Shown in pieces: positions 2,496 to 30,100 of a DNA stretch of 64,000 bases. The first letter of the stretch is position 1, and each line of letters starts with the position of its first letter. The notes beneath the pieces were generated by a model that was given only the letters and a program-made list of their open reading frames with translations, ran no database searches and was not told the DNA's origin. This DNA comes from Mytilus trossulus (Eukaryota): NCBI RefSeq assembly GCF_036588685.1, contig NC_086381.1, positions 21,018,001 to 21,082,000 of the forward strand, given 5' to 3'. The translations under genes were made by a program, and so were the position numbers.

Positions 2496-3656
2496 TGATC
2501 ATACATACATTTACCATTTTTTCAAAACAAATAAATTCTTTTTATATACACATAACGAAAGTATTTTCTATTAGTAATTTCATCTTTTGTAATATTTAAG
2601 AATATGGTATGAGTGGTACACCAGAGTATCAGGATCTGAATTATGCGTCAATATTTTGGCTTTGTTTTTAATGTTATTTTGTTAATTGTCTGGAGTCCTA
2701 AAGAAAGATTTTCTCTCTGTTTTATTTTATTCTTGTCAAAAAAGAAAAATACACATAGAAGACTTTAAAATCTACATTTACTGCTTCTACACCAAGCATA
2801 ACATTTAAGATTGTAAGCAAAAACTGATCAAAATAATGTCATGTATTCTTAGAGACGATTTAATACCAAGTCAGCTGGCAAAAAAAAATAGTCATTGTAA
2901 TATTTGTGATTTGACATTAAGCAGCCATTGATTGTTCCATCTTTACACACCTTGTGTTACATAGAAAGTTTCCTAGACCAATTCTTAGTTGCTGTGTAAC
3001 CCAGATGTATATAAGTGTTGAAATGCTTCTTAAAAGAGTCTGAAAGTATGGCATCCTGTTCTATTTACTTCATTAACTGACTTATATCAAGATTAAGTTA
3101 AAGTAGCAAAGAAATGCAACCCTAAGTAATGCTTCACTGATTTTAATTGGGTTTCAAAGGTTAATCATGAAAATCATCAAGTATTAAATTTTTGATGAGT
3201 ATGACATCTATATACTTTTTTGGGACGATCAATGAAGCTGAATGTGGACATGTAGTTGGAACCCCCTGCCTTTGTCCTGGGTTAGGACCCCCCCCCCCCC
3301 CCCCCCCCCCCCCTTTTTAAAATGGCTCGATCCGCCCCCGATATATATGGGATTTACTTATTGTTGTAGTCAATACAGTGAACTATAGTTATTTTAACAT
3401 CTACATCATTTTGGTCTTTGGTTGATAGTTGTTGCATTTGCAATTATACCACATCTCCTTTAATATTGTATACAGCTTTCTGACATTGACATGACAGTAT
3501 AAATAGTAAAACAACAATAAATTTTATACTTTAATCTATAAATATCAACATAACAAATAAATCAGCTCTTTCAGTTCATGTTACATTAGGAATTGTTGTC
3601 TTGTAGACAGCATAGGTCTCATTGACACTTCTATAACGCTCAACACATTCTTGTTT

Positions 3657-6600
3657 TTAAGCTGGAACAAATTTCGACTGTTGTGGTAGCCTAAACTCAG
3701 ACATATCATTGTCTATATCATAATAAGACAGATCATTATACTGGTAGTATTCTATTGATTTATACTGGGAGTTGTCAAATGGCTCTGAAAAACATAGGAT
3801 ATAAAATAGTATAATATTATATTTAAAATCCCATTAAAATATACATTTCGTGTAAAATGTGGATGTGCCAGAATTGTTTGAAATGTGAAGACCTATAAAA
3901 TACATGTACAAAATGTACTATGTTCTTGATAAATTGTCAAACTACATGTACTCCTTTAAGGAGTTAATGTTCTTGAAAAACTATTTTTTTGTATTTTCTA
4001 ATTTTGTGATTTTTTTGTGGAAACTATTGAAAATTGATAGAAACTGAATTAAGTCAGCAAAATAAGAGCATGACATCTACAAATACCACAACATAGCTAA
4101 AATCATCAGTAGACTCCTTGTTGAAATTATTTCCCTTCAATGCAGATTTTCCATGATAATATTTTTGCAGAAATTGTAGTATATAGCAACTGTTATTAGT
4201 ATAGTCTGTAGACAGTCGACCCTCATTGACGGTTTAGAAGCTTCATTAACAAAAAACATCATTTGAAGAACAGTTTTCTTTATTTTTTTTATTTTACTGA
4301 TTTGACTGATAATTAACTTATTTTTTGTGAGCTATTATTTATGTTTGTACTCTGTTGTGTCTGTTTAAACACTTCAACTTCTATTTATAAAGGAACAAAT
4401 TCACAGGGTATTGTATGTTAGGTATGCACTATAATTATTATATGGTAAAATTTAATAATACCAGTCTTAGATTCTTTAGCTTTGGCAACAGTTTCCTTCT
4501 TGGCAGGTTTCTTTTCTTTTGCTGGACCTTTATCTTCACCTGTACTGTACAGCCGTGGCAAATATCCCTGTAATGTATGTAAATAACATGTTATTAGATC
4601 ATGACATGGACAGACCTTTATCTTCACCTGTACTGTACACCGTGGCAAATATCCCTGTAATGTATATAAATAACATGCTATTAGATCATGACATGGACAG
4701 ACCTTTATCTTCACCTGTACTGTACAGCCGTGGCAAATATCCCTGTAATGTATATAAATAACATGTTATTAGATCATGACATAGACGGACCTTTATCTTC
4801 ACCTGTACTGTACACCGTGGAAATATCCCTGTAATGTATATAAATAACATGTTATTAGATCATGACATAGACGGACCTTTATCTTCACCTGTACTGTACA
4901 CCGTGGAAATATCCCTGTAATGTATATAAATAACATGTTATTAGATCATGACATAGACGGACCTTTATCTTCACCTGTACTGTACACCGTGGAAATATCC
5001 CTGTAATGTATATAAATAACATGTTATTAGATCATGACATAGACGGACCTTTATCTTCACCTGTACTGTACAGCCGTGGCAATTATCCCTGTAATGTATA
5101 TAAATAACATGCTATTAGATCATGACATGGACAGACCTTTATCTTCACCTGTACTGTACACCGTGCAAATATCCCTGTAATGTATATAAATAACATGCTA
5201 TTAGATCATGACATAGACAGACCTTGATCTTCACCTGTACTGTACAGCCGTGGCAAATATCCCTGTAATGTATATAAATAACATGTTATTAGATCATGAC
5301 ATAGACAGACCTTTATCTTCACCTGTACTGTACAGCCGTGGCAAATATCCCTGTAATGTATATAAATAACATGTTATTAGATCATGACATAGACAGACCT
5401 TTATCTTCACCTGTACTGTACACCGTGGCAAATATCCCTGTAATGTATATAAATAACATGTCATTAGATCATGACATGGACGGACCTTTATCTTCACCTG
5501 TACTGTACACTGTGGAAATATCCCTGTAATGTATATAAATAACATGTCATTAGATCATGACATGGACAGACCTTTATCTTCACCTGTACTGTACACCGTG
5601 GCAAATATCCCTGTAATGTATATAAATAACATGTTATTAGATCATGACATAGACGGACCTTTATCTTCACCTGTACTGTACACCGTGGAAATATCCCTGT
5701 AATGTATATAAATAACATGATATTAGATCATGACATAGAGACCTTGATCTTCACCTGTACTGTACACCGTGGCAAATATCCCTGTAATGTATGTAAATAA
5801 CATGTTATTAGATCATGACATGGACGGACCTTTATCTTCACCTGTACTGTACACCGTGGCAAATATCCCTGTAATGTATATAAATAACATGTCATTAGAT
5901 CATGACATGGACAGACCTTTATCTTCACCTGTACTGTACACTGTGGAAATATCCCTGTAATGTATGTAAATAACATGTTATTAGATCATGACATAGACAG
6001 ACCTTTATCTTCACCTGTACTGTACAGCCGTGGTAAATATCCCTGTAATGTATATAAATAACATGTTATTAGATCATGACATAGACGGACTTTTATCTTA
6101 ACCTGTACTGTACAGCCGTGGTAAATATCCCTGTAATGTATATAAATAACATGCTATTAGATCATGACATAGACGGACCTTTATCTTAACCTGTACTGTA
6201 CAGCCGTGGTAAATATCCCTGTAATGTATATAAATAACATGCTATTAGATCATGACATAGACGGACCTTTATCTTCACCTGTACTGTACAGCTGTGGCAA
6301 ATATCCCTGTAATGTATATAAATAACATGCTATTAGATCATGACATAGACCGACCTTTATCTTCACCTGTACTGTACACCGTGGAAATATCCCTGTAATG
6401 TATATAAATAACATGCTATTAGATCATGACATAGACGGACCTTTATCTTCACCTGTACTGTACACCGTGCAAATATCCCTGTAATGTATATAAATAACAT
6501 GTCATTAGATCATGACATAGACGGACCTTTATCTTCACCTGTACTGTACAGCCGTGGCAAATATCCCTGTAATGTATATAAATAACATGCTATTAGATCA

Positions 6601-9600
6601 TGACATGGACAGACCTTTATCTTCACCTGTACTGTACACCGTGGAAATATCCCTGTAATGTATATAAATAACATGCTATTAGATCATGACATAGACGGAC
6701 CTTTATCTTCACCTGTACTGTACAGCCGTGGCAAATATCCCTGTAATGTATATAAATAACATGCTATTAGATCATGACATGGACAGACCTTTATCTTCAC
6801 CTGTACTGTACACCGTGCAAATATCCCTGTAATGCATATAAATAACATGCTATTAGATCATGACATGGACAGACCTTTATCTTCACCTGTACTGTACAGC
6901 TGTGGCAAATATCCCTGTTATGTATATAAATAACATGCTATTAGATCATGACATAGACGGACCTTTATATTCACCTGTACTGTACACCGTGCAAATATCC
7001 CTGTAATGTATATAAATAACATGCTATTAGATCATGACATAGACGGACCTTTATCTTCACCTGTACTGTACACCGTGCAAATATCCCTGTAATGTATATA
7101 AATAACATGTCATTAGATCATGACATAGACGGACCTTTATCTTCACCTGTACTGTACACCGTGCAAATATCCCTGTAATGTATATAAATAACATGTCATT
7201 AGATCATGACATAGACAGACCTTTATCTTCACCTGTACTGTACACCGTGGCAAATATCCCTGTAATGTATATAAATAACATGTTATTAGATCATGACATA
7301 GACGGACCTTTATCTTCACCTGTACTGTACAGCTGTGGCAAATATCCCTGTAATGTATATAAATAACATGCTATTAGATCATGACATAGACGGACCTTTA
7401 TCTTCACCTGTACTGTACAGCCGTGGCAAATATCCCTGTAATGTATATAAATAACATGCTATTAGATCATGACATAGACGGACCTTTATCTTCACCTGTA
7501 CTGTACAGCTGTGGCAAATATCCCTGTAATGTATATAAATAACATGCTATTAGATCATGACATAGACGGACCTTTATCTTCACCTGTACTGTACAGCCGT
7601 GGCAAATATCCCTGTAATGTATATAAATAACATGTCATTAGATCATGACATGGACAGACCTTTATCTTCACCTGTACTGTACACCGTGGCAAATATCCCT
7701 GTAATGTATATAAATAACATGCTATTAGATCATGACATGGACAGACCTTGATCTTCACCTGTACTGTACACCGTGCAAATATCCCTGTAATGTATATAAA
7801 TAACATGCTATTAGATCATGACATAGACGGACCTTTATCTTCACCTGTACTGTACACCGTGGCAAATATCCCTTTAATGTATATAAAATAACATGCTATT
7901 AGATCATGACATAGACAGACCTTTATCTTCACCTGTACTGTACAGCTGTGGCAAATATCCCTGTAATGTATATAAATAACATGTCATTAGATCATGACAT
8001 GGACAGACCTTTATCTTCACCTGTACTGTACAGCCGTGGCAAATATCCCTGTAATGTATGTAAATAACATGTTATTAGATCATGACATAGACAGACCTTT
8101 ATCTTCACCTGTACTGTACACCGTGGCAAATATCCCTGTAATGTATATAAATAACATGCTATTAGATCATGACATAGACAGACCTTTATCTTCACCTGTA
8201 CTGTACACCGTGCAAATATCCCTGTAATGTATATAAATAACATGCTATTAGATCATGACATAGACGGACCTTTATCTTCACCTGTACTGTACACCGTGCA
8301 AATATCCCTGTAATGTATATAAATAGCATGCTATTAGATCATGACATAGACGGACCTTTATCTTCACCTGTACTGTACACCTTGGCAAATATCCCTGTAA
8401 TGTATATAAATAACATGCTATTAGATCATGACATAGACAGACCTTTATCTTCACCTGTACTGTACAGCTGTGGCAAATATCCCTGTAATGTATATAAATA
8501 ACATGTCATTAGATCATGACATGGACAGACCTTTATCTTCACCTGTACTGTACAGCCGTGGCAAATATCCCTGTAATGTATGTAAATAACATGTTATTAG
8601 ATCATGACATAGACAGACCTTTATCTTCACCTGTACTGTACAGCCGTGGAAATATCCCTGTAATGTATATAAATAACATGTCATTAGATCATGACATGGA
8701 CAGACCTTTATCTTCACCTGTACTGTACAGCCGTGGCAAATATCCCTGTAATGTATATAAATAACATGCTATTAGATCATGACATAGACAGACCTTTATC
8801 TTCACCTGTACTGTACAGCTGTGGCAAATATCCCTGTAATGTATATAAATAACATGCTATTAGATCATGACATAGACAGACCTTGATCTTCACCTGTACT
8901 GTACAGCCGTGGCAAATATCCCTGTAATGTATATAAATAACATGCTATTAGATCATGACATAGACGGACCTTTATCTTCACCTGTACTGTACACCGTGGC
9001 AAATATCCCTGTAATGTATATAAATAACATGCTATTAGATCATGACATGGACGGACCTTTATCTTCACCTGTACTGTACAGCCGTGGCAAATATCCCTGT
9101 AATGTATGTAAATAACATGCTATTAGATCATGACATAGACAGACCTTTATCTTCACCTGTACTGTACAGACGTGGAAATATCCCTGTAATGTATGTAAAT
9201 AACATGTTATTAGATCATGACATGGACGGACCTTTATCTTCACCTGTACTGTACAGACGTGGAAATATCCCTGTAATGTATATAAATAACATGTTATTAG
9301 ATCATGACATAGACGGACCTTTATCTTCACCTGTACTGTACACCGTGGAAATATCCCTGTAATGTATATAAATAACATGTTATTAGATCATGACATAGAC
9401 GGACCTTTATCTTCACCTGTACTGTACACCGTGGAAATATCCCTGTAATGTATATAAATAACATGTTATTAGATCATGACATAGACGGACCTTTATCTTC
9501 ACCTGTACTGTACACCGTGGAAATATCCCTGTAATGTATATAAATAACATGTTATTAGATCATGACATGGACGGACCTTTATCTTCACCTGTACTGTACA

Positions 9601-12600
9601 GACGTGGAAATATCCCTGTAATGTATGTAAATAACATGTTATTAGATCATGACATAGACAGACCTTTATCTTCACCTGTACTGTACACCGTGGAAATATC
9701 CCTGTAATGTATATAAATAACATGTTATTAGATCATGACATGGACGGACCTTTATCTTCACCTGTACTGTACAGACGTGGAAATATCCCTGTAATGTATG
9801 TAAATAACATGTTATTAGATCATGACATAGACAGACCTTTATCTTCACCTGTACTGTACACCGTGGAAATATCCCTGTAATGTATATAAATAACATGCTA
9901 TTAGATCATGACATGGACAGACCTTTATCTTCACCTGTACTGTACACCGTGGAAATATCCCTGTAATGTATGTAAATAACATGTTATTAGATCATGACAT
10001 AGACAGACCTTTATCTACACCTGTACTGTACAGACGTGGAAATATCCCTGTAATGTATGTAAATAACATGTTATTAGATCATGACATAGACAGACCTTTA
10101 TCTTCACCTGTACTGTACACCGTGGAAATATCCCTGTAATGTATATAAATAACATGTTATTAGATCATGACATGGACAGACCTTTATCTTCACCTGTACT
10201 GTACAGCCGTGGCAAATATCCCTGTAATGTATATAAATAACATGCTATTAGATCATGACATAGAGACCTTTATCTTAACCTGCACTGTACAGCCGTGGCA
10301 AATATCCCTGTAATGTATATAAATAAGATGCTATTAGATCATGACATGGACAGACCTTTATCTTCACCTGTACTGTACAGCCGTGGCAAATATCCCTGTA
10401 ATGTATATAAATAACATGTTATTAGATCATGACATGGACGGACCTTTATCTTCACCTGTACTGTACAGACGTGGCAAATATCCCTGTAATGTATATAAAT
10501 AACATGCTATTAGATCATGACATAGAGACCTTTATCTTCACCTGTACTGTACAGCCGTGGCAAATATCCCTGTAATGTATATAAATAACATGCTATTAGA
10601 TCATGACATAGAGACCTTTATCTTAACCTGCACTGTACAGCCGTGGCAAATATCCCTGTAATGTATGTAAATAACATGCTATTAGATCATGACATAGAGA
10701 CCTTTATCTTCACCTGTACTGTACAGCCGTGGCAAATATCCCTGTAATGTATATAAATAACATGCTATTAGATCATGACATAGAGACCTTTATCTTAACC
10801 TGCACTGTAAAGCCGTGGCAAATATCCCTGTAATGTATATAAATAACATGCTATTAGATCATGACATAGACAGACCTTTATCTTCACCTGTACTGTACAC
10901 CGTGGCAAATATCCCTGTAATGTATGTAAATAACATGTTATTAGATCATGACATGGACGGACCTTTATCTTCACCTGTACTGTACAGCCGTGGCAAATAT
11001 CCCTGTAATGTATATAAATAACATGCTATTAGATCATGACATAGACAGACCTTTATCTTCACCTGTACTGTACAGCTGTGGCAAATATCCCTGTAATGTA
11101 TATAAATAACATGTCATTAGATCATGACATGGACAGACCTTTATCTTCACCTGTACTGTACAGCCGTGGCAAATATCCCTGTAATGTATGTAAATAACAT
11201 GTTATTAGATCATGACATAGACAGACCTTTATCTTCACCTGTACTGTACAGCCGTGGAAATATCCCTGTAATGTATATAAATAACATGTCATTAGATCAT
11301 GACATGGACAGACCTTTATCTTCACCTGTACTGTACAGCCGTGGCAAATATCCCTGTAATGTATATAAATAACATGCTATTAGATCATGACATAGACAGA
11401 CCTTTATCTTCACCTGTACTGTACAGCTGTGGCAAATATCCCTGTAATGTATATAAATAACATGCTATTAGATCATGACATAGACAGACCTTGATCTTCA
11501 CCTGTACTGTACAGCCGTGGCAAATATCCCTGTAATGTATATAAATAACATGCTATTAGATCATGACATAGACGGACCTTTATCTTCACCTGTACTGTAC
11601 ACCGTGGCAAATATCCCTGTAATGTATATAAATAACATGCTATTAGATCATGACATGGACGGACCTTTATCTTCACCTGTACTGTACAGCCGTGGCAAAT
11701 ATCCCTGTAATGTATGTAAATAACATGCTATTAGATCATGACATAGACAGACCTTTATCTTCACCTGTACTGTACAGACGTGGAAATATCCCTGTAATGT
11801 ATGTAAATAACATGTTATTAGATCATGACATGGACGGACCTTTATCTTCACCTGTACTGTACAGACGTGGAAATATCCCTGTAATGTATATAAATAACAT
11901 GTTATTAGATCATGACATAGACGGACCTTTATCTTCACCTGTACTGTACACCGTGGAAATATCCCTGTAATGTATATAAATAACATGTTATTAGATCATG
12001 ACATAGACGGACCTTTATCTTCACCTGTACTGTACACCGTGGAAATATCCCTGTAATGTATATAAATAACATGTTATTAGATCATGACATAGACGGACCT
12101 TTATCTTCACCTGTACTGTACACCGTGGAAATATCCCTGTAATGTATATAAATAACATGTTATTAGATCATGACATGGACGGACCTTTATCTTCACCTGT
12201 ACTGTACAGACGTGGAAATATCCCTGTAATGTATGTAAATAACATGTTATTAGATCATGACATAGACAGACCTTTATCTTCACCTGTACTGTACACCGTG
12301 GAAATATCCCTGTAATGTATATAAATAACATGTTATTAGATCATGACATGGACGGACCTTTATCTTCACCTGTACTGTACAGACGTGGAAATATCCCTGT
12401 AATGTATGTAAATAACATGTTATTAGATCATGACATAGACAGACCTTTATCTTCACCTGTACTGTACACCGTGGAAATATCCCTGTAATGTATATAAATA
12501 ACATGCTATTAGATCATGACATGGACAGACCTTTATCTTCACCTGTACTGTACACCGTGGAAATATCCCTGTAATGTATGTAAATAACATGTTATTAGAT

Positions 12601-15600
12601 CATGACATAGACAGACCTTTATCTACACCTGTACTGTACAGACGTGGAAATATCCCTGTAATGTATGTAAATAACATGTTATTAGATCATGACATAGACA
12701 GACCTTTATCTTCACCTGTACTGTACACCGTGGAAATATCCCTGTAATGTATATAAATAACATGTTATTAGATCATGACATGGACAGACCTTTATCTTCA
12801 CCTGTACTGTACAGCCGTGGCAAATATCCCTGTAATGTATATAAATAACATGCTATTAGATCATGACATAGAGACCTTTATCTTAACCTGCACTGTACAG
12901 CCGTGGCAAATATCCCTGTAATGTATATAAATAAGATGCTATTAGATCATGACATGGACAGACCTTTATCTTCACCTGTACTGTACAGCCGTGGCAAATA
13001 TCCCTGTAATGTATATAAATAACATGTTATTAGATCATGACATGGACGGACCTTTATCTTCACCTGTACTGTACAGACGTGGCAAATATCCCTGTAATGT
13101 ATATAAATAACATGCTATTAGATCATGACATAGAGACCTTTATCTTCACCTGTACTGTACAGCCGTGGCAAATATCCCTGTAATGTATATAAATAACATG
13201 CTATTAGATCATGACATAGAGACCTTTATCTTAACCTGCACTGTACAGCCGTGGCAAATATCCCTGTAATGTATGTAAATAACATGCTATTAGATCATGA
13301 CATAGAGACCTTTATCTTCACCTGTACTGTACAGCCGTGGCAAATATCCCTGTAATGTATATAAATAACATGCTATTAGATCATGACATAGAGACCTTTA
13401 TCTTAACCTGCACTGTAAAGCCGTGGCAAATATCCCTGTAATGTATATAAATAACATGCTATTAGATCATGACATAGACAGACCTTTATCTTCACCTGTA
13501 CTGTACACCGTGGCAAATATCCCTGTAATGTATGTAAATAACATGTTATTAGATCATGACATGGACGGACCTTTATCTTCACCTGTACTGTACAGCCGTG
13601 GCAAATATCCCTGTAATGTATATAAATAACATGCTATTAGATCATGACATACAGACCTTTATCTTCACCTGTACTGTACAGCCGTGGAAATATCCCTGTA
13701 ATGTATGTAAATAACATGCTATTAGATCATGACATGGACGGACCTTTATCTTCACCTGTACTGTACAGCCGTGGCAAATATCCCTGTAATGTATATAAAT
13801 AACATGCTATTAGATCATGACATGGACGGACCTTTATCTTCACCTGTACTGTACAGCCGTGGCAAATATCCCTGTAATGTATATAAATAACATGTTATTA
13901 GATCATGACATAGAGACCTTGATCTTCACCTGTACTGTACAGCAGGGCAAATATCCCTGTAATGTATATAAATAACATGTTATTAGATCATGACATAGAG
14001 ACCTTGATCTTCACCTGTACTGTACAGCCATGGCAAATATCCCTGTAATGTATATAAATAACATGCTATTAGATCATGACATGGACGGACCTTTATCTTC
14101 ACCTGTACTGTACAGCCGTGGCAAATATCCCTGTAATGTATATAAATAACATGCTATTAGATCATGACATGGACGGACCTTTATCTTCACCTGTACTGTA
14201 CAGACGTGGAAATATCCCTGTAATGTATGTAAATAACATGTTATTAGATCATGACATGGACGACCTTTATCTTCACCGGTACTGTACAGACGTGGAAATA
14301 TCCCTGTAATGTATATAAATAACATGTTATTAGATCATGACATAGACAGACCTTTATCTTCACCTGTACCGTACAGCCGTGGCAAATATCCCTGTAATGT
14401 ATATAAATAACATGTTATTAGATCATGACATAGACAGACCTTTATCTTCACCTGTACTGTACAGCCATGGAAATATCCCTGTAATGTATATAAATAACAT
14501 GTTATTAGATCATGACATAGACAGACCTTTATCTTCACCTGTACTGTACAGCCGTGGCAAATATCCCTGTAATGTATATAAATAACATGTTATTAGTTCA
14601 TGACATGGACGGACCTTGATCTTCACCTGTACTGTACACCGTGGCAAATATCCCTGTAATGTATATAAATAACATGCTATTAGATCATGACATAGACAGA
14701 CCTTTATCTTCATCTGTACTGTACAGCCGTGGCAAATATCCCTGTAATATATGTAAATAACATGTTATTAGATTATGACATGGACAGACCTTTATCTTCA
14801 CCTGTACTGTACAGCCGTGGAAATATCCCTGTAATGTATGTAAATAACATGTTATTAGATCATGACATAGACAGACCTTTATCTTCACCTGTACTGTACA
14901 GCCGTGGCAAATATCCCTGTAATGTATATAAATAACATGTTATTAGATCATGACATTGACAGACCTTTATCTTCACCTGTACTGTACAGCCGTGGCAAAT
15001 ATCCCTGTAATGTATATAAATAACATGCTATTAGATCATGACATGGACGGACCTTTATCTTCACCTGTACTGTACAGACGTGGAAATATCCCTGTAATGT
15101 ATGTAAATAACATGTTATTAGATCATGACATGGACGGACCTTTATCTTCACCTGTACTGTACAGCCGTGGCAAATATCCCTGTAATGTATATAAATAACA
15201 TGTTATTAGATCATGACATAGACAGACCTTTATCTTCACCTGTACCGTACAGCCGTGGAAATATCCCTGTAATGTATGTAAATAACATGCTATTAGATCA
15301 TGACATTGACAGACCTTTATCTTCACCTGTACTGTACACCGTGGAAATATCCCTGTAATGTATGTAAATAACATGCTATTAGATCATGACATAGACAGAC
15401 CTTGATCTTCACCTGTACTGTACACCGTGGAAATATCCCTGTAATGTATATAAATAACATGTTATTAGATCATGACATGGACGGACCTTTATCTTCACCT
15501 GTACTGTACACCGTGGAAATATCCCTGTAATGTATATAAATAACATGCTATTAGATCATGACATGGACGGACCTTGATCTTCACCTGTACTGTACACCGT

Positions 15601-18600
15601 GGAAATATCCCTGTAATGTATGTAAATAACATGTTATTAGATCATGACATGGACGGACCTTTATCTTCACCTGTACTGTACAGCCGTGGAAATATCCCTG
15701 TAATGTATATAAATAACATGCTATTAGATCATGACATAGACAGACCTTGATCTTCACCTGTACTGTACACCGTGGCAAATATCCCTGTAATGTATATAAA
15801 TAACATGTTATTAGATCATGACATGGACGGACCTTTATCTTCACCTGTACTGTACAGCCGTGGCAAATATCCCTGTAATGTATATAAATAACATGTTATT
15901 AGATCATGACATAGAGACCTTTATCTTCACCTGTACTGTACAGCCGTGGCAAATATCCCTGTAATGTATGTAAATAACATGTTATTAGATCATGACATGG
16001 ACGGACCTTTATCTTCACCTGTACTGTACAGACGTGGAAATATCCCTGTAATGTATGTAAATAACATGTTATTAGATCATGACATAGACAGACCTTTATC
16101 TTCACCTGTACTGTACAGCCGTGGCAAATATCCCTGTAATGTATATAAATAACATGTTATTAGATCATGACATAGACAGACCTTTATCTTCACCTGTACT
16201 GTACAGCCGTGGCAAATATCCCTGTAATGTATATAAATAACATGTTATTAGATCATGACATGGACAGACCTTTATCTTCACCTGTACTGTACACCGTGGA
16301 AATATCCCTGTAATGTATATAAATAACATGCTATTAGATCATGACATGGACAGACCTTTATCTTCACCTGTACTGTACAGCCGTGGCAAATATCCCTGTA
16401 ATGTATATAAATAACATGTTATTAGATCATGACATAGACAGACCTTTATCTTCACCTGTACTGTACACCGTGGAAATATCCCTGTAATGTATATAAATAA
16501 CATGTTATTAGATCATGACATAGACAGACCTTTATCTTCACCTGTACTGTACACCGTGGAAATATCCCTGTAATGTATGTAAATAACATGTTATTAGATT
16601 ATGACATGGACAGACCTTGATCTTCACCTGTACTGTACACCGTGGCAAATATCCCTGTAATGTATGTAAATAACATGCTATTAGATCATGACATGGACAG
16701 ACCTTTATCTTCACCTGTACTGTACACCGTGGCAAATATCCCTGTAATGTATATAAATAACATGCTATTAGATCATGACATGGACGGACCTTTATCTTCA
16801 CCTGTACTGTACACCGTGGCAAATATCCCTGTAATGTATATAAATAACATGCTATTAGATCATGACATGGACGGACCTTGATCTTCACCTGTACTGTACA
16901 GCCGTGGCAAATATCCCTGTAATATATGTTCATAGCATGCTATTAGATCATGATCACCTATTCTCAGAATAAGTGTCCACGCTTGTGAAATCCTTGTCGC
17001 TGATGCCCGAGGGGAGTATTACAGCATATATCTGTCAATTATTGTGATTTTTATACGAAGATATATATAATTTAATGATTTCAATCAATTTATTTGACTT
17101 GCCTACATTAGTTCAGTAAAATTTTAGTGTCGAAAGTACGCTAATTTCACCAAAAATGCATGTCGCCAGGCATAGGGCTATAATGAAACAACTGCCAAAT
17201 AAAAACCAATCTATAGTTCTGAACAATGTAAAGTGTTTTCTTGTAGCATATTAACGTTACAACAAAGTGAAAAAAACAGTTCTCATTCAAATATATACAT
17301 TTTTTCAATACACCTTTTTTTGCTGATGTCGCCGAAAACTATGTAATCTACGTTGTTAAGCTTAAAATTTATACAATTTTACTACATATAGTATTTAACG
17401 AATGTTAACTAGACCAAACTTATTTTAAAAGTATTGCTGTTAAACATATGTACAAACTTTGTCTTGAAATTCATTGAAATATTTTTTTTTACATTTTATG
17501 AAACCGAAAACGAGCGTTGCTATAAGCTTGTAAGTTACGTTATAGCGATTACTAACATAAGTATGTGAATTAATGCTTATTGTTTGCCTTAAAAGGTACA
17601 CCTTATTGTAAAGACCAATTAAATACCCGGTGTTTTAGATTTGAGGCTTTAGAACTTGCTGAAAAATTGAAAATAGATGGTGGTTGTAATTTACGTTTTG
17701 TAAATTACGTTACCTGCTATACAATATGACAATAAAACGCGACGTTAGTACAGAAATTTTGACGTTATTCTACCGCCAGTGGTTCTTTGTTTTCATATTT
17801 CGTCTGACGTCATATAAGGAAAGCGTCATTTGACCTTCAAGGTTTTTCAAAATATATGAATGTGGAATACTCAGCTTAAATTCAGGTAAGGAGTTTATAT
17901 TGTCTTTCGTTGTGATTCAAGATTATATATAAAGTTAAATGCATATTTATCAAACCTTTTGTGATGCATTCATTAGAGGCTATAAGCATTTACAGCATGT
18001 ATTTTCAATTTAAAAACACTAGAAAAATTGGTAATTTACGTGATCAGTAGTGTCCGAATGTTATGACTACAAATAAGGTACAAAGAAGTTAGCATCCCAA
18101 AAATTTATAAAAATAGACATAATTGTTCATGAATTTTGCAAACTTATTCCATTGTGTATCCAGATGTGTAAATATATTGCATATTTGCTCCTTTGAATCC
18201 CTGATAACGTAGCTTACTTATGGCTACAGAAAGGCTTATAATTTATAACATTTCTTTTGCTGTGTCAAGTCAAACATGTTTTGAAAGCATGTAAACAACA
18301 GCAAGGGTGTTTATCGTTATTTTAACGGCTTCATTGCTATTTAATTTCCAAGTATCCTCTCATTTAATGTGTGCAAAATGTTATAACGTAGACTACACAA
18401 CTTGATAACGTAGATTACACATTCTTATTAAGAGTATATCAAAGAATTTCTACCATCATTTCAGATAGCTGGCTTTATAATGCTGTAGTTAATTTGTGTT
18501 CTGTTGATTTAATCAAATTTTATTTTATTTTCAGAAATGGGAAAATCAAAGGCTGAAATTCAGAAAGCCTATAGAGAGCGAAAAAAACAGAAAGAAGGAG

Positions 18601-21600
18601 AAGCTTATCTTAAAAAAGAAAGAGAAAGAGTCAAAGGATACTATGTGCCAATAGAAGAAAAGCCACAAAGAAAGGCAAATGAAAGGCGTAAAAAGGTTCG
18701 TGAATGGGTTCGACAACATAGGCTAAAGAAAAAGAATCTTACCAAAACAGTAGCTAATAATTTGGAGCAAACCAAAACAGTAGCTAAATAACTTGGAGCA
18801 ATGTTCAGAAATATCATCATCATCAGATGTCACATCTACAGTTAACATTGTGACTGAACAATTGATAGTTAAGTTACCGTCACTGGCTACAAAGAAAAGA
18901 ACCAGAACTAGAGTAAATCGTGACCAACGCCAAACATAGAAGAACAATAGCAGACCTGACAGACAAAAATGAACTACTCAATAGAAAAATTAGGACCGTA
19001 TCAAAGCGATATCAGAGATTAATAAACAGGGAAAAGAAAACACAAACTATCATAAGAAATCCTACTACATCATCCTCCTCCAGAAATAGCCCTTCTACAT
19101 CAACATCAATTGCTCTGACACCTAGAAAAAGAACTATACAAGAAATCAGAGAAGAGGGTCTGACACCACATAAGGTTCCAAAAAAGATCCAGGAAAAACT
19201 ACTCTTTGCAAATGTTATAACAGAAGAGATAGGGGCTGCTTGGAAATCAAATGGGTTGAAGGGAAAACACGTTTTGAAGAAAATTGTTAACGGAGAAATA
19301 ATCAAGAAGTACAAGATGAAGAAAATGTTAGGCATCAAATCCGGAATAAGACGTCATCACTTCAAGGCCACAGTGTGTTCCAACAAATTGCTCTCTTTTC
19401 CTTTATTGAGGAAGCGTGTAGAATCAAGAGAAATACTTCGTGGAGACGTCGTCACATTCTTAGAAAGAGACGATAATAGCAGAATGATGCCTGGCAAAAA
19501 CGATAAAAAGAAAACTGAAACCGGTCATATACAAAAAAGAGTTCTTAACGACAGCATGTTATTTTTGCATCTCAAATTCAAAACTGAGTCACCGAAGAAA
19601 ATTTCACTTGCTACCTTCTGTCGTTTGAGACCAAAGCATATATGCCTGACCAAACATTTAAGTAGAAATAAATGCCTCTGCCAAAAGCACCAAAACATGG
19701 CGTTAGCCCTTAAGAACATGAAAACGTCAGGTGCCAACGTAACCATCAATCCCGATGAATTTGTAAGGCAGCTAAAAGACAAGCCACTCCCAGAGATACT
19801 CTCAGAAATTCGAAATGAAAATGTCAGGTATGAACAGTGGAAAAAGGTTGAGATGGCAGATGGCAAAAAAAGAACAAAAATTGTTGAGAGAGAGGAAACA
19901 AGGGACAGCTTCATTTCAATTGTACATACTCAAGTTCGTGATTTTCAAGAACACGTGTCAAGAGTTCGACTTCAATACCAAGCCTTAAACAATCTGAAAG
20001 AAAATTTACCGTGTGAAAATGTAATCGTGCAGATGGACTTTGCCGAAAACTTTTCATGTACTTCAGCCGATGAAGTTCAGAGTGCATATTGGAATTCGAG
20101 TGCTGTTACCCTACATCCAGTTGTTGTTTATTTCAAGAACGAACAGAAGGAACTTGAACATAAAAACTATGTCTTCGTTTCCGACGATCTTGGGCACAAC
20201 ATAGGATCTGTTTATACCATCATTCAAAAGCTTTTGTCTGAAATAAAGAATCATGTCAATAATCTGAAGGTTGTTCACTACTGGACAGATAGTCCAAGTT
20301 CACAATATCGTAACAAGACGGCCTTCTACATTGTGTCTGATCATAGAAATATATTTGGTGTCAATGCCATTTGGAACTATTTTGAAACCGGGCACGGAAA
20401 AGGGCCATGCGATGGCATTGGGGGAACATCAAAACATACCGCAGACCTCGCCGTCAGACAAGGAAAAATAACAGTACAGGATGCACCTGAGTACTTTGAA
20501 AGAGTGCAAAAGCACCACACGAGTGCTAAATACATTTATTACAATTCAACAGAATGCACAGATAGCAGGTTAGAGATTTCAGAGTTCAACAAACACATAA
20601 TTCCATTGAAGGGAACAATGTAGGTCCACTGTGTGGTTGGTGTATCTAAAGGTATAGTCAAGACGACCGTGACTTCCTGTTACTGTGAGGAATGTTTGAT
20701 AGGTAATTTCCATGATTACTCAGAGTCAAACATATTGAAAGGAGAGAATGCTGGTCGTGTTGTAGTACCAGAAAAAGAGGCCAATATAAATCAAAATGAG
20801 CATGTTGAAACAGCTGAAGTCGAAGCTGACAGGATTGAGATAACCATCGCCGTCGACCAATTTGTTGCGGCAATATATGATAATGCATGGCACGTTTGAA
20901 AAATAACAGACATCGATGAAACTGATAAAGAATGTCAAGTTAATTTTTTGCGGCCAAGTCAAGGAAGGAATACTGGAAATCCTTTGTATAAATGGCCAAA
21001 TCCAGAAGACAAAATATGGTTACAGGTCACAGACATATTGTGTAACATTAGAGAGCCCAATAAAGTTGGACGGAGTGGTCGAAGCTTTGAAATTGATCCT
21101 CAGGACTATAGAAATGCCTGTAGTTTGTTACAGTTAAGATCTAATACTTAAACAGATGCTTAAAAACTGAAAATCAAGAAAGAACGTTCTTTTTTTATAA
21201 AGTGTAATTTACGTTATATTTGTAAAACATTTACAGTTTAATGATAAAACACCCAAAATGTTGTTACAATATTTCTTTTTTCATACATTTTGAAAGAATT
21301 CAGGAAGAAGGATGAAACAATCCTGATTATGAGAGAATTTTTCTTTGTAAGATACGTTACAGTTTTGTGTAATTTACGTTATTGTTTCATTGTTGGCAAT
21401 CCAAGTTTGTTATGAAAACATTTTAAAAAGATGTGTAGTAATTATTTTTTCATCAGATGAGAGGCAATACACAACATGTAGAGTGTTTGCATACACTGAG
21501 CATGTTTTTTAATACTGAAAATGTAAGCTGTCATATTATTGTCATGTTTTATACCAAATTTTTATCAGTTTATATTTCGATCCAATGTTTTTTTTTAATA

Positions 21601-22644
21601 GGAATTTTGAGGAGAAACTTTTACAGTTATTTGACTGTATTATTATCAGTTTATTTAGCCATTGAAAACTATTCAAATTTACAAAATATGTTTGAACTAT
21701 TCATTTGAATCTATGCATAAGTACCTGAAACGTAGATTACAGCATACTCTATACCCATATTTTGGCATTGTATTTTCTTTTTTATGACTATTGGTTGAGA
21801 TCTGCCGTTTTGCATTTTGATTTGTTGTATGCTTATGTTTGAAATAAAATATAAATATTGATGTTTGTTACAACTTTTTGAATTAGAAATTATTTTCCAA
21901 CCGTGGACACTTATTCTGAGAATAGGTGCATGACCATGATGACATGGACAACTATTTTTTTTAAAGTTTAAGATGTTGGCTTTCTGTCTTACTGCTAGAT
22001 ATTGTCCAATTTAATGGATTTGATTATATATTGAAACAGTTTCATCAGAATTCAAACTGGAAAAAAATTGGATTCGCCTAGGCTATGACTATGAGCATTG
22101 TGCTTAAGTTTTATAACATTTAGTGTAGGCAAAATTCAGCATTTTTTCCATTTGTAAAGGGGCATAACTCTAGAACTGTAAATTCAAAACCGATCTGTAT
22201 GTTGTGGTAGTTAGCATTGTGTATAAGTTTCATAACATTTGGTTGAGGCAGGAACATATATTTTATATTGTTCCAAAGTTGAGGCAAACTAAAGTTTCGA
22301 GAAGAATTGAGTGTGTCTGGCATTACTGTAAATCCACTTAAAAAATAATGCATATGTGAGCTATTCCATATGAATCAAGAGCAATCAATGATAAATACAA
22401 ACGACATACTGTACTGTGTACAAAAACATTCAAGGTTGACTCTATCATATTCAACACATGCATGGCCATGGGAAAGGTCAAATGATAATGTTTCTATCTG
22501 TTTATCAAACAGGAAAAGAAGAAAGCGCAGTGTTGGTTAATCTCGTGATAAAATGGAATGCTATAATGAATCAATATTTTGTAAACCTACTCGTAAAACA
22601 CTGGAATAGCTTGCCACTTTTCTTGTTAAAGCAGAAGAAGTCAT
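3657..22644 (-). CDS. NDUFV3: NADH dehydrogenase [ubiquinone] flavoprotein 3, mitochondrial (95 aa, 3 coding exons)
   Basis: Exon 1 22644-22591 (MTSSALTRKVASYSSVLR, donor GTAGGT); exon 2 4567-4462 (GYLPRLYSTGEDKGPAKEKKPAKKETVAKAKESKT); exon 3 3784-3657 (EPFDNSQYKSIEYYQYNDLSYYDIDNDMSEFRLPQQSKFVPA*). Phases are consistent. The C-terminus matches the NDUFV3 EPFDN..Y...Y...D....S.FR.PQ motif. The N-terminus is an Arg/Ser-rich presequence with an R-x-Y|S-like cleavage site. Confidence 0.88.
4524..16953. repeat. Tandem array of 86-88-bp units, about 142 copies, derived from the NDUFV3 intron1/exon2 junction
   Basis: Unit (+): GACCTTTATCTTCACCTGTACTGTACA(G)CCGTGG(C)AAATATCCCTGTAATGTATRTAAATAACATGYTATTAGATCATGACATRGACR. 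Copy number estimated as 12.43 kb / ~87.3 bp. The first unit is continuous with real exon 2. Confidence 0.97.
16954..21929 (+). mobile_element. Full-length DNA transposon (Sola2-like), ~28-bp TIRs, 4-bp TSD
   Basis: Left TIR tCACCTATTCTCAGAATAAGTGTCCACG (16954-16981); right TIR CGTGGACACTTATTCTGAGAATAGGTGc (21902-21929). ATGA flanks both ends (16950-53, 21930-33) if one terminal mismatch is allowed. Encloses a transposase pseudogene. Superfamily call is from recalled motifs. Confidence 0.85.
18537..21151 (+). pseudogene. Disrupted DDD-type transposase (Sola2-like) with C-terminal Tudor-like domain
   Basis: Motifs DFAENF, QSAYW..VTLHP, SDDLGH, WTDSPSSQYRNK, WNYFETGHGKGPCDGIGG. Frameshifts near 18787 and 18922; in-frame stops at 20621-23 (TAG) and 20897-99 (TGA); terminal TAA 21149-51. 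A 5' UTR intron is likely (donor CAG|GTAAGG ~17885, acceptor TTTCAG ~18534). Confidence 0.85.
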
Positions 22645-27166: not shown

Positions 27167-30100
27167 ATGGCAGAACAGGTACAGTCCACATGGCCGTCAA
27201 AGAAATGTGTCTATTTGCACGTTTTCTACATATTATTCGTGTTTTATTAACAGTTTAATTACAATTAAAAAGTATGAATTATCAAAACATGAAATTGAAC
27301 ATTCTACAACAGAAGTAACGCATGTAAACTCAGTAAAGTTAAAGGAAACAAATAAAAGGGGGGTTGTTGGGGCACTAGTTCAAGTCTGTACACAAGTTTG
27401 TCCATCACTAAATATAGAACTGCGTTGCGCCGAAACTTCTTTAAATTAAAATCATTAGAATTTTATTAAGAACGAAATTTTCTTAAACCATGCATTATAT
27501 CGTATTCTCAAAACTTGAAATTTCAGACAAAATGTCTTCCTCTTGCAATGTACAAAATTATACTATGACTATGTGGGGATGCCGTACACACGATTTAGAA
27601 TAATTTTACACATAATACATAGATAATTGCTTTTATATTAAACTTTAATATGTATTTAATTATTTGCTATGTAGTCGCCAATACGGCAATAGCGTGTCAG
27701 CATAGGACCTGCAAGTTTACTGAAAATTATATTCATGAAAAGATAGTAAATGGGCTCAATCTTCTCAAAATGCAAACAATAAGGTGTCGGGCTTGTTTTG
27801 AATTGATTACATTAAATAATAAGTTGATTGGTTTATTGTGAAACACTAGTCCAAATAATTGACGTTTGGCAAGGCTATTTCTTTTTCTGGGACGCCTTCC
27901 TACAACGTCATAACGCCGAAGCCATTTTTTACGTCTGGAGTTAAAGAGCAAATTTTGGGGGAAACTTTGAAACCTAATTTTGACCAACAATTTTTATTGC
28001 CGGTTGAAAAAATTTACGTAGTTACAAAGCCCTACCTTTTTTGTGCTTATTGGTGTAAAATATTTCCAGAAATATCCAAAAGAAAGGATAAAACAAGATA
28101 AGATTCCATTTGAAGTGGGGGAATATTTATTTTGTTTGGCAAAGATTTCCCACAATTACCAACGGCACGTGACTTCGGGTGAATATAAAATTTGAAATCC
28201 AGTAAATTTTAATGGCTACGAATTTCCGGAACGTTCGATTTACATTATCCATAAATTCAGGTCTGTCAAATTTTATATTCAGTAGAAGTCACGTGCCGTT
28301 CTTACAAAAATTGCCAATCCTGCATCACGCTTAACCCACAATTGATCAAAACAATGAAAAGAATTTAGTCCTTCATTTACTAATCCCAAAGACACATTTT
28401 ATAAATTTTCATTAGCAAAATATTAGGGATAAGTATTTTGAGAAACCTTTTGCTCTATAAAAAGCAATGATTCTATCATGCATCTTATATTTAACAACAA
28501 TTCATACACTAGTAACAGTGGACTAATTTAAATGTAATTCAAATTTCTATTTAACAGACAGAAAGGTCGTTTCAAAAGCAGCACACAGTGTTTATGAACA
28601 AGAAGCAAGGTGCTGGAAAAAAGAAGACTCTTAGACATTATTTCAGTGTTGGTCTGGGGTTCAAAACACCCAGAGAGGTAAGAATGTTTACATGTACATT
28701 TATTGCAACCAAAAATTTACATTGTGCCAGTGTGTTGGGACTACAAAAAATTTATTCAGTCATCACAAGTACTTACAAGCCTAGTCCTTTGACCAATGTG
28801 AATGTGTTTTATTAAAGTTGATAACTTGACCAAATGGGACTACTTGAACTTCAAACACAATTGTTTTTGTTTGTACTTTACACTAGAACAAGCCTACACG
28901 GGAATAATGTCGGAATAATTCATGTCTATGGAAAAGTTTGAATAAAGCTGTAAATGATGTTTTATCACGATGGTCTACTGATATCATTGATGAGATGCCT
29001 TATGGCTTTTTTCTGATCCAGCTTTATTCAAAAGATTGCTAGACATCCATGCATATATACATGTACTTCACAGTTTTTGTACCTTTTTTCAAAACAAAGG
29101 GCTAAGAATAGATGTAAGAGGATGTGGTATGAGTGCCAATGAGACAAATCCGTTACAGACATGTTGGAACAACTAAAGTGAACACCACTTGAGAATAGAA
29201 GGAGAGGCGCTATCAATAGGGACTATCAATGCTGTATAAAATCAGGAGGTCATTGTTGCAGCCAGCCACAAACTCATTCCACCAAACCCCACTGTTAAAT
29301 ATTTGTATAGCACCTTTTTGTTTTTGTTTCATATTTAAAAAAATGTAAATAGTATTCATTTTGAGCTCACTGGCTTAAAAGAACATACTTTTCAATATTT
29401 TACCCCTTCAATAATTATTAGACTTTCTATTTTTCTTTTAGAACCAATTCAAGTCCAATTAAAAGCATTGAAATAAATGACTGTCATTTCATAGATATGT
29501 CTACAGTGTATTAAGTCTAGCTGTAAATGATGTTTTATCACGATGGTCTACTGATATCATTGATGAGATGCCTTATGGCTTTTTTCTGATCCAGCTATTA
29601 AATCATTCTAAATATAATCAAAATTTACCTTTGCATTGTTAGATTGATTACTTGAAGCCTTTAAAATCTGAGAACTTCCAATAAGGACTTGTAAATGTAC
29701 ATGTGTTCTGATGATCTTTCATTTCCCTATCAAATATATCTATATAAAAGTTTGATATTTTAACCTTCAACTAACCAAAAAATTAGTGTCATCTTGGAAA
29801 CTTGTCTGAATGTAATCTCAAAATTTTATGTTGTAACAATATTTATTTATTTTTTTTAATATTTAGTTCACCGTCTCAAAAAAACATACTTCTCAATATT
29901 TTAACCCCATTGGCCTGAGTTCGTGAAATCTTTTTTTCCCTGGTGGTCCTTGAAGAAAATCTGCTGGTCCTCACTATTAACTCCATTGAAAAATACTAAA
30001 ATTGTGTCAGTCCTATGCAATATTTTGGTGGTAAAATCCTGAGATCCACCACTTTTCACGAACTAGCTGTAAATGATGTTTTATCACGATGGTCTACTGA

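What the first reader, a model, noticed from the sequence alone, without database searches (positions are those of the whole stretch)
4462..16953. About 142 tandem copies of NDUFV3's own branch point + 3' splice site + exon-2 start
Seen: on the transcribed (-) strand each unit reads gtcYgtcYatgtcatgatCTAATaacatgttatttaYatacattaCAG|GGATATTTGCCACGGCTGTACAGTACAGGTGAAGATAAAG. That is a CTAAT branch-point match ~27 nt upstream, the acceptor, and the first 40 nt of exon 2 (GYLPRLYSTGEDK, spanning the predicted presequence cleavage site). Only the last unit runs on into the rest of exon 2 and its donor. Reading through from an upstream acceptor hits a stop within one or a few units (e.g. ...GEDKGPSMS*). 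Inference: the spliceosome must skip ~141 near-identical acceptors, presumably by exon definition. Array length could therefore tune productive versus NMD-bound splicing of a complex I subunit. This is a satellite born from a splice junction, not a generic intronic repeat.
Basis: partly seen in the sequence, partly recalled or inferred. Interest (0 to 1): 0.85.

Follow-up and report, generated by a model that had tools for sequence, protein, structure and literature searches.

The report
Splice-acceptor minisatellite in mussel NDUFV3 intron
Intron 1 of the single NDUFV3 gene of the mussel Mytilus trossulus ends in about 142 tandem copies of its own 3' splice site plus exon-2 start; this is a very large example of a known oddity ("mirage" minisatellite), and nothing here shows that it regulates the gene.

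Summary
An 86-88-bp unit is repeated 142.9 times (window 4525-16953). On the minus strand it gives 143 CAG|GGAT acceptors, and only the last one (4567) runs on into exon 2.

The gene is NDUFV3.

Both halves of the unit occur nowhere else in the 1.3-Gb genome. The exon-2 start (GYLPRLYSTG) is conserved in four other Mytilus NDUFV3 proteins. So the array was born from this junction.

- Only 63 decoys have a 40-nt exon part, and only 35 are identical to the true one.
- Each decoy also carries a donor-like AAG|GTCYGT.
- A 2,608-bp block of 30 units is duplicated exactly, so the copy number may be recent or an assembly artefact.

This kind is known: amphioxus "mirage" minisatellites, and the human F7 intron-7 VNTR for donors. 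This scan has already noted many such arrays elsewhere in the same genome.

Splicing "tuning" remains untested speculation.

Best reading: a near-neutral junction minisatellite. The decoys are ignored because they lack the purine-rich exon body.

The parts
22591..22644 (-). NDUFV3 exon 1 coding part (ATG to donor CGA|GTAGGT), 18 codons, phase 0
   Evidence: Sequence. The translation MTSSALTRKVASYSSVLR equals residues 1-18 of P0005.
16954..22590 (-). Unique 5' part of intron 1 (about 5.6 kb), upstream of the array
   Evidence: Apart from a 2-copy 30-bp repeat at 18741-18801, there is no tandem array here.
4525..16953 (-). Array of 86-88-bp units. It holds 142 decoy copies of branch point, 3' splice site and first 38-40 nt of exon 2. 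The 143rd copy is the true junction.
16866..16953 (-). First (edge) unit, with its acceptor at 16916. It is among the most diverged units (91% identity to the true junction), and its intron half differs from the consensus.
8383..13651 (-). Exact tandem duplication of a 30-unit block of 2,608 bp. The 2,661-bp exact repeat is at 13651-10991 and 11043-8383.
4616..4654 (-). Exon-like part of the last decoy. Its unit is 87 nt (29 codons), so use of the acceptor at 4654 would add 29 residues in frame.
4593..4597 (-). CTAAT branch-point match of the true acceptor (branch A at 4594, 26 nt before the intron end)
4462..4567 (-). NDUFV3 exon 2 (106 nt). The first 44 nt are shared with the repeat and the last 62 nt are unique and purine-rich. 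The donor is CTG|GTATTA.
3785..4461 (-). Intron 2
3657..3784 (-). NDUFV3 exon 3 coding part with the PF15880 domain and the stop codon (3657-3659)

Best explanation
This is a splice-junction ("mirage"-type) minisatellite.

Origin. An ~88-bp segment spanning the last ~48 nt of intron 1 and the first ~40 nt of exon 2 of the single-copy NDUFV3 gene of Mytilus trossulus was duplicated in tandem. It then expanded to about 142 copies (12.4 kb), by unequal exchange or replication slippage. Because only the downstream edge copy adjoins the rest of exon 2, all other copies lie inside intron 1.

Splicing (inferred). The exon-1 donor is joined to the last acceptor. Only that acceptor is followed by a full-size exon of 106 nt, with a GAR-rich, purine-rich body and its donor. 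By exon definition, the complex built on the exon body engages the nearest upstream branch point, pyrimidine tract and AG.

The decoys are followed only by a 38-40-nt exon-like stub, a donor-like AAG|GTCYGT and a 46-48-nt spacer. That spacer is too short to serve as an intron between neighbouring units.

Consequence. The array is most likely near-neutral or slightly costly, not a regulatory device.

Shown: anatomy, gene identity, uniqueness to this locus, exon model. Inferred: silence of the decoys and the reason for it.
For: Anatomy:
- Array and its register.

Gene and exon model:
- PF15880 hit in exon 3, the only hit over the cut-off in the whole genome.
- P0005 scores 42.7 bits against PF15880.
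- The exon-by-exon translations match RefSeq M. trossulus XP_063400984.1 residue for residue.

Born at this locus:
- A 26-mer of the exon half has 141 matches at up to 2 mismatches in the 1.3-Gb genome. A 34-mer of the intron half has 141 at up to 3 mismatches.
- The window alone accounts for all 141 in each case.
- GYLPRLYSTG at the exon-2 start is conserved in the M. edulis, M. galloprovincialis and M. californianus proteins and in a fourth Mytilus record whose species name is cut off in the output.

Minisatellite turnover:
- 79 unit variants.
- The first edge unit is among the most diverged (91%).
- An exact 30-unit block duplication.

Discriminator between true site and decoys:
- Unique exon body: 69% purine, 5 GAR triplets in 62 nt. 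Behind the decoys: 46% purine, mean 0.007 GAR.
- RNA folding gives no occluding structure (z = -0.87).

Precedent:
- Amphioxus mirages in Adh3, globin, TnC and PGBD5 duplicate splice sites without disturbing mRNA splicing (PMC3087553; PMC3902484).
- In the human F7 IVS7 VNTR, only the donor next to the exon is used (PMC1557585).
Against:
- I could not inspect the evidence behind the RefSeq model, which is a computed annotation.
- By a simple count of matches to CAG|GTAAGT, the decoy donors (6/9) are no weaker than the true exon-2 donor (5/9). So donor strength does not explain the choice.
- The decoy signals show no decay: 8 of 9 signal positions are invariant, against 54 of 88 positions overall (permutation p about 0.04). 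This is compatible with youth and homogenisation, but it does not exclude constraint.
Confidence: 0.7

Rival explanations
1. Decoy acceptors compete with the true one. A length-dependent share of transcripts is spliced to decoys and removed by NMD, so array length tunes NDUFV3 (complex I subunit) dosage.
For: - 141/142 decoys keep CAG, and all keep CTAAT at the same spacing.
- They are transcribed before the true site.
- Read-through meets a stop after a median of 18 codons.
- The gene is single-copy, so any loss is not buffered by a paralogue.
Against: - There are no RNA data.
- Published arrays of this kind are reported not to disturb splicing.
- An unchecked note of this scan on a 32-copy acceptor array in the same genome reports that transcripts use only the last copy.
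- Many unrelated genes in this genome carry such arrays. That points to a mutational process, not gene-specific regulation.
Confidence: 0.07
2. Low-level noise. Decoys are used in a small fraction of transcripts, giving frameshifted products with 38- or 40-nt micro-exons, or in-frame 13-residue (39-nt micro-exon) or 29-residue (acceptor 4654) insertions in the presequence. This has no adaptive role, and the array is a mildly deleterious load.
For: - Each decoy has acceptor and donor-like signals. AAG|GTCYGT is present in 125/142, and consensus matches equal those of the true donors.
- 39 decoys are stop-free 39-nt units.
- The unit at 4654 reads in frame into exon 2.
Against: - 38-40-nt exons are below the size that is usually defined efficiently (established knowledge of exon definition, not tested here).
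- C at donor position +3 is rare in real donors.
- No such isoform appears among the five Mytilus NDUFV3 proteins found.
Confidence: 0.18
3. Reverse direction. A pre-existing intronic satellite supplied the acceptor and the first 40 nt of exon 2 (exonisation of a repeat), not the junction seeding the satellite.
For: From the structure alone, the direction cannot be read: the true junction is simply the edge unit.
Against: - The unit is absent from the rest of the genome.
- The encoded GYLPRLYSTG is conserved in all five Mytilus NDUFV3 proteins, including the more distant M. californianus.
- It lies where a presequence cleavage motif (R-x-Y|S) is expected, which is an inference from the known R-3 rule.
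Confidence: 0.03
4. The copy number is partly an assembly artefact. The exact 2,608-bp (30-unit) duplication is a mis-assembly, and the true array has about 112 units.
For: The two 2,608-bp blocks show 0 differences, while random unit pairs differ by about 5%.
Against: - A very recent unequal exchange gives the same picture.
- The rest of the array has 79 distinct unit variants in a non-periodic order. A collapsed or artificially expanded assembly would not be expected to produce that.
Confidence: 0.2

Closest known systems
"Mirage" minisatellites of amphioxus (Adh3: Canestro et al. 2002, Nucleic Acids Res 30:2871, cited in PMC3087553; globins BflGb6/BflGb9: PMC3087553; TnC and PGBD5: PMC3902484)
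   Same: - Tandem repeats whose unit spans an exon-intron boundary.
- BflGb6 duplicates the 3' end of an intron plus the 5' part of exon 2, exactly as here.
- Many units keep their AG/GT signals.
- The authentic junction is the edge copy.
- There is concerted evolution, with a diverged boundary unit.
- Regular splicing is reported as undisturbed.
   Different: - Phylum: mollusc versus cephalochordate.
- Scale: about 142 copies and 12.4 kb here, against 3-6 copies in BflGb6 and units of 10-160 bp.
- Here each unit also has a donor-like site, so it mimics a whole micro-exon.
- Splicing was not tested here.
Human F7 intron 7 37-bp VNTR (Borensztajn et al. 2006, PMC1557585)
   Same: - The first element of the minisatellite spans an exon-intron boundary.
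- So the authentic splice site sits beside several identical pseudo-sites, which stay silent.
- The site adjoining the exon body is the one used.
   Different: - F7 repeats a donor, downstream of its exon. Here an acceptor is repeated, upstream of its exon.
- F7 has a handful of copies.
- The F7 mechanism (5'-to-3' scanning from the exon) was shown with minigenes. Here the mechanism is inferred.
Other splice-junction arrays noted by this scan in the same M. trossulus genome (s1-818517 PHGDH acceptor x32; s1-820760 acceptor x28; s1-820509, s1-829917, s1-820772 donor arrays of 58 to about 120 copies)
   Same: Same genome and same architecture: the working exon is the edge copy of an array built from its own junction.
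   Different: - These are unchecked notes and I did not re-test them.
- The present array is the largest acceptor-type case among those listed.
Recursive splice sites / RS-exons in long introns
   Same: Intronic 3' splice sites inside a long (18-kb) intron that could be used before the final exon.
   Different: After joining, the exon-1/unit junction reads CGA|GGATAT. No GT 5' splice site is regenerated, so a decoy cannot be removed again. This is not a recursive site.

Membership tests
Mirage / splice-junction minisatellite | Head-to-tail tandem array | tested here: met
   TRF: period 88, 142.9 copies, 95% matches. Unit spacing is 85-89 nt.
Mirage / splice-junction minisatellite | The unit spans an exon-intron boundary of the host gene (intron end plus exon start) | tested here: met
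   Each unit has 46-48 nt of intron (CTAAT ... TTACAG) plus 38-40 nt identical or nearly identical to the start of exon 2. The exon model equals RefSeq XP_063400984.1.
Mirage / splice-junction minisatellite | The authentic junction is the edge copy, continuous with the rest of the exon | tested here: met
   Only the unit at 4567 continues into the remaining 62 nt of exon 2 and its donor.
Mirage / splice-junction minisatellite | The repeat is local to the gene, not a dispersed element | tested here: met
   Each half of the unit has 141 genome-wide matches, all inside the window.
Mirage / splice-junction minisatellite | Regular splicing is not disturbed (only the authentic copy is used) | not testable with these tools
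The only indirect evidence is that the annotated protein corresponds to the last acceptor.
Mirage / splice-junction minisatellite | Length instability or polymorphism | tested here: inconclusive
   The exact 2,608-bp block duplication indicates either a recent change or an assembly error. No second haplotype or individual was available.
NDUFV3 (Pfam PF15880) | C-terminal NDUFV3 domain scoring over the curated cut-off | tested here: met
   44.1 bits on window 3672-3776, cut-off 25. P0005 scores 42.7 bits over residues 57-91.
NDUFV3 (Pfam PF15880) | N-terminal mitochondrial presequence | not tested
   No targeting predictor was available. R-L-Y|S-T fits the R-3 cleavage motif, from established knowledge only.
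Recursive splice site | A 3' splice site immediately followed by a regenerated 5' splice site (AG|GT) | tested here: not met
   All units read CAG|GGAT.

The most novel reading that the evidence does not exclude
The 142 intact decoy acceptors act as a kinetic trap. A measurable, array-length-dependent share of NDUFV3 pre-mRNA is spliced to decoys. The products would be NMD substrates, or in-frame presequence variants of +13 or +29 residues. Length polymorphism of the array would then modulate the dosage or import of a complex I subunit among mussels.
Probability: 0.07. Interest if true: 0.7.

Novelty: new member of a known kind. Interest (0 to 1): 0.38.

Why it matters
This is a natural experiment in 3' splice-site choice. 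There are 142 copies of the authentic branch point, pyrimidine tract, AG and first ~40 exon nucleotides. They lie upstream of the real site and are transcribed before it, in a single-copy mitochondrial complex I gene.

If transcripts use only the last copy, then positions -48 to +44 are not sufficient to define this acceptor. The deciding information must lie in the exon body or in proximity to it.

Together with the many sister arrays noted in this genome, it suggests that mussels are a rich system for junction minisatellites, which so far are described mainly in amphioxus. If the array is silent, as I expect, it is a curiosity of genome turnover and not a regulatory element.

Tried and rejected
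I made no further tries, so read laying was never used.
I cannot say whether they carry the array.
- BLAST-type search of the own genome with two to three units failed: too many candidates. I replaced it with pattern searches. One pattern was too long for the tool.
- Array-derived ORFs. A protein search with a 98-aa ORF covering two units plus exon 2 found only the two NDUFV3 clusters.
- Occlusion by RNA structure. Rejected: z = -0.87 for three units plus exon 2.
- Recursive splicing. Rejected: no GT after the AG.
- Selection on the decoy signals. Marginal only (p about 0.04), against a background where 61% of positions are invariant. Not convincing.
- Joined spliced model. Exons were translated separately by reference and compared with P0005.
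- Literature. A search for the phenomenon in Mytilus found nothing in the held library.
Full report
**Observation**

Tandem Repeats Finder reports a single large array at window 4525-16953: period 88, 142.9 copies, 95% matches, 1% indels. Read on the minus strand, the region contains 143 matches to TTACAG|GGAT, spaced 85-89 nt apart. The first acceptor is at 16916 and the last at 4567.

It has a 46-48-nt intron-like part carrying CTAAT, with the branch A 26 nt before the intron end. The unit ends in TTACAG, followed by 38-40 nt that match the start of exon 2. Among the 142 decoys, CTAAT is present in all and CAG in 141.

Only the last unit continues into the remaining 62 nt of exon 2 and the donor CTG|GTATTA at 4462/4461.

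**Gene and exon model**

A search of the whole 1.3-Gb assembly with Pfam PF15880 (NDUFV3) gives one hit over the curated cut-off. It lies at window 3672-3776 on the minus strand and scores 44.1 bits against a cut-off of 25. The gene is therefore single-copy in this assembly.

The exons are:
- Exon 3 starts after tttcag at 3784 and stops at 3657.
- Exon 1 is 22644-22591 and exon 2 is 4567-4462.

Translated separately by reference, exons 1, 2 and 3 give 18, 35 and 41 residues. Together with the split codon G|AG (Glu), these equal the 95-residue RefSeq protein XP_063400984.1 of Mytilus trossulus, residue for residue (P0005). P0005 scores 42.7 bits against PF15880.

**Origin of the array**

A 26-mer from the exon half of the unit has 141 matches in the whole genome at up to 2 mismatches. 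A 34-mer from the intron half has 141 at up to 3 mismatches. The window alone holds 141 of each. The repeat therefore exists only here.

The exon-2 start encodes GYLPRLYSTG. This is conserved in the NDUFV3 proteins of M. edulis, M. galloprovincialis and the more distant M. californianus, and in a fourth record whose species name is cut off in the output. So the junction seeded the satellite, not the reverse.

The residues R-L-Y|S-T fit the R-3 presequence cleavage motif.

**Fine structure**

- The exon part comes in three lengths: 40 nt in 63 units, 39 nt in 41 and 38 nt in 38.
- Only 35 decoys carry the exact 40 nt of the true exon.
- No decoy is identical to the true junction over -40..+44. 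The mean is 95% and the best is 99%.

Other features of the array:
- Variation sits in about ten high-frequency positions, and 54 of 88 positions are invariant.
- There are 79 distinct unit variants.
- The first edge unit is among the most diverged, at 91%. The same is described for amphioxus arrays.
- Units 39-68 and 69-98 are an exact 2,608-bp duplicate; the exact repeat runs 2,661 bp, at 13651-10991 and 11043-8383. This is either a very recent unequal exchange or an assembly error, so the true count could be about 112.

The exon-like part of each decoy ends in AAG|GTCYGT in 125 of 142 units. By a simple count this matches CAG|GTAAGT at 6 of 9 positions. The true exon-1 donor also scores 6, and the true exon-2 donor scores only 5. 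Each unit therefore mimics a whole micro-exon followed by a 46-48-nt spacer.

The consequences, if decoys were used, would be as follows:
- Unspliced read-through from a decoy acceptor meets a stop after a median of 18 codons.
- The unit at 4654 is 87 nt long and reads in frame into exon 2, which would add 29 residues.
- 39 decoys are stop-free 39-nt micro-exons, which would add 13 residues.
- The 38- and 40-nt forms shift the frame.

**What distinguishes the true site**

Donor strength does not explain the choice, and RNA structure does not either (z = -0.87 for three units plus exon 2). Two things differ:
- Exon size: 106 nt against 38-40 nt.
- Exon body: the unique 62 nt of exon 2 are 69% purine with 5 GAR triplets. 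The 62 nt behind the decoys are 46% purine with essentially none.

This fits exon definition through a purine-rich enhancer and proximity. It is an inference.

Recursive splicing is excluded, because the units read CAG|GG and no 5' site is regenerated after joining.

The decoy signals show no decay, but the test against the highly invariant background is only marginal (p about 0.04).

**Comparison with what is known**

Tandem repeats that span an exon-intron boundary were named "mirages" in amphioxus Adh3 (Canestro et al. 2002, cited in PMC3087553). They have also been found in amphioxus globin, TnC and PGBD5 genes. One of them, BflGb6, duplicates an intron 3' end plus the exon-2 start, as here.

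Those papers report that many units keep their AG/GT signals, that regular splicing is not disturbed, and that the arrays show concerted evolution with diverged edge units.

The donor-side analogue is the human F7 intron-7 37-bp VNTR. There only the site next to the exon is used, although the pseudo-sites are functional (PMC1557585).

I found no description of this in Mytilus in the held library.

Unchecked notes of this scan list many sister arrays in the same genome:
- Acceptor arrays of 28 and 32 copies.
- Donor arrays of 58 to about 120 copies.
- For the 32-copy acceptor case, a follow-up reports that transcripts use only the last copy.

I did not re-test these notes. They gave me the term "mirage", which I then checked in the literature. 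They also suggest a genome-wide mutational process, not a device specific to NDUFV3.

**Limits**

No RNA or read evidence could be obtained:
I stopped there, and read laying was never used.

Whether the decoys are truly silent, whether the array is polymorphic, and how old it is all remain open.

**Verdict**

The claim that it was born from a splice junction is well supported. The claim that it tunes splicing is unsupported.

It is a very large new member of a known kind. The acceptor-type arrays I could find described or noted have 3 to about 33 copies. I rate interest at 0.38.

Noticed in passing
window 8383-13651: Inside the array, a 30-unit block of 2,608 bp is duplicated in tandem with zero differences, while random units differ by about 5%. 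This is either a very recent unequal exchange or an assembly artefact.
   Followed up: partly
window 4616-4654 (acceptor at 4654): The last decoy unit is 87 nt (29 codons) and reads in frame into exon 2. Use of this one acceptor would give a 29-residue in-frame insertion, not a premature stop.
   Followed up: partly
window 4525-16953, every unit: Each unit contains the perfect palindrome CTGTACAG (or a variant lacking the C) in its exon-like part. A fold of three units showed no significant structure (z = -0.87).
   Followed up: partly
window 45934-47723: A second sizeable tandem array with a 144-bp unit and 288/432-bp higher-order periods, 81-95% matches depending on period. Its unit contains CATGACCTAAT, loosely like the CATGATCTAAT of the NDUFV3 unit. 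I did not examine whether it spans a splice junction.
   Followed up: no
window 53058-53236: A 44-bp tandem repeat with 4.1 copies and 99% matches.
   Followed up: no
window 3288-3313: A run of 26 C on the plus strand (G on the gene's strand), about 350 nt downstream of the NDUFV3 stop codon. Polyadenylation-signal-like hexamers lie at 3535, 3464 and 3147, so the run may lie in or just after the 3' UTR.
   Followed up: no
window 28937-38620: Other first-stage notes place an RPS11 gene with tandem C/D snoRNA arrays here. TRF shows a 64-bp two-copy repeat at 34600-34726. Not examined.
   Followed up: no
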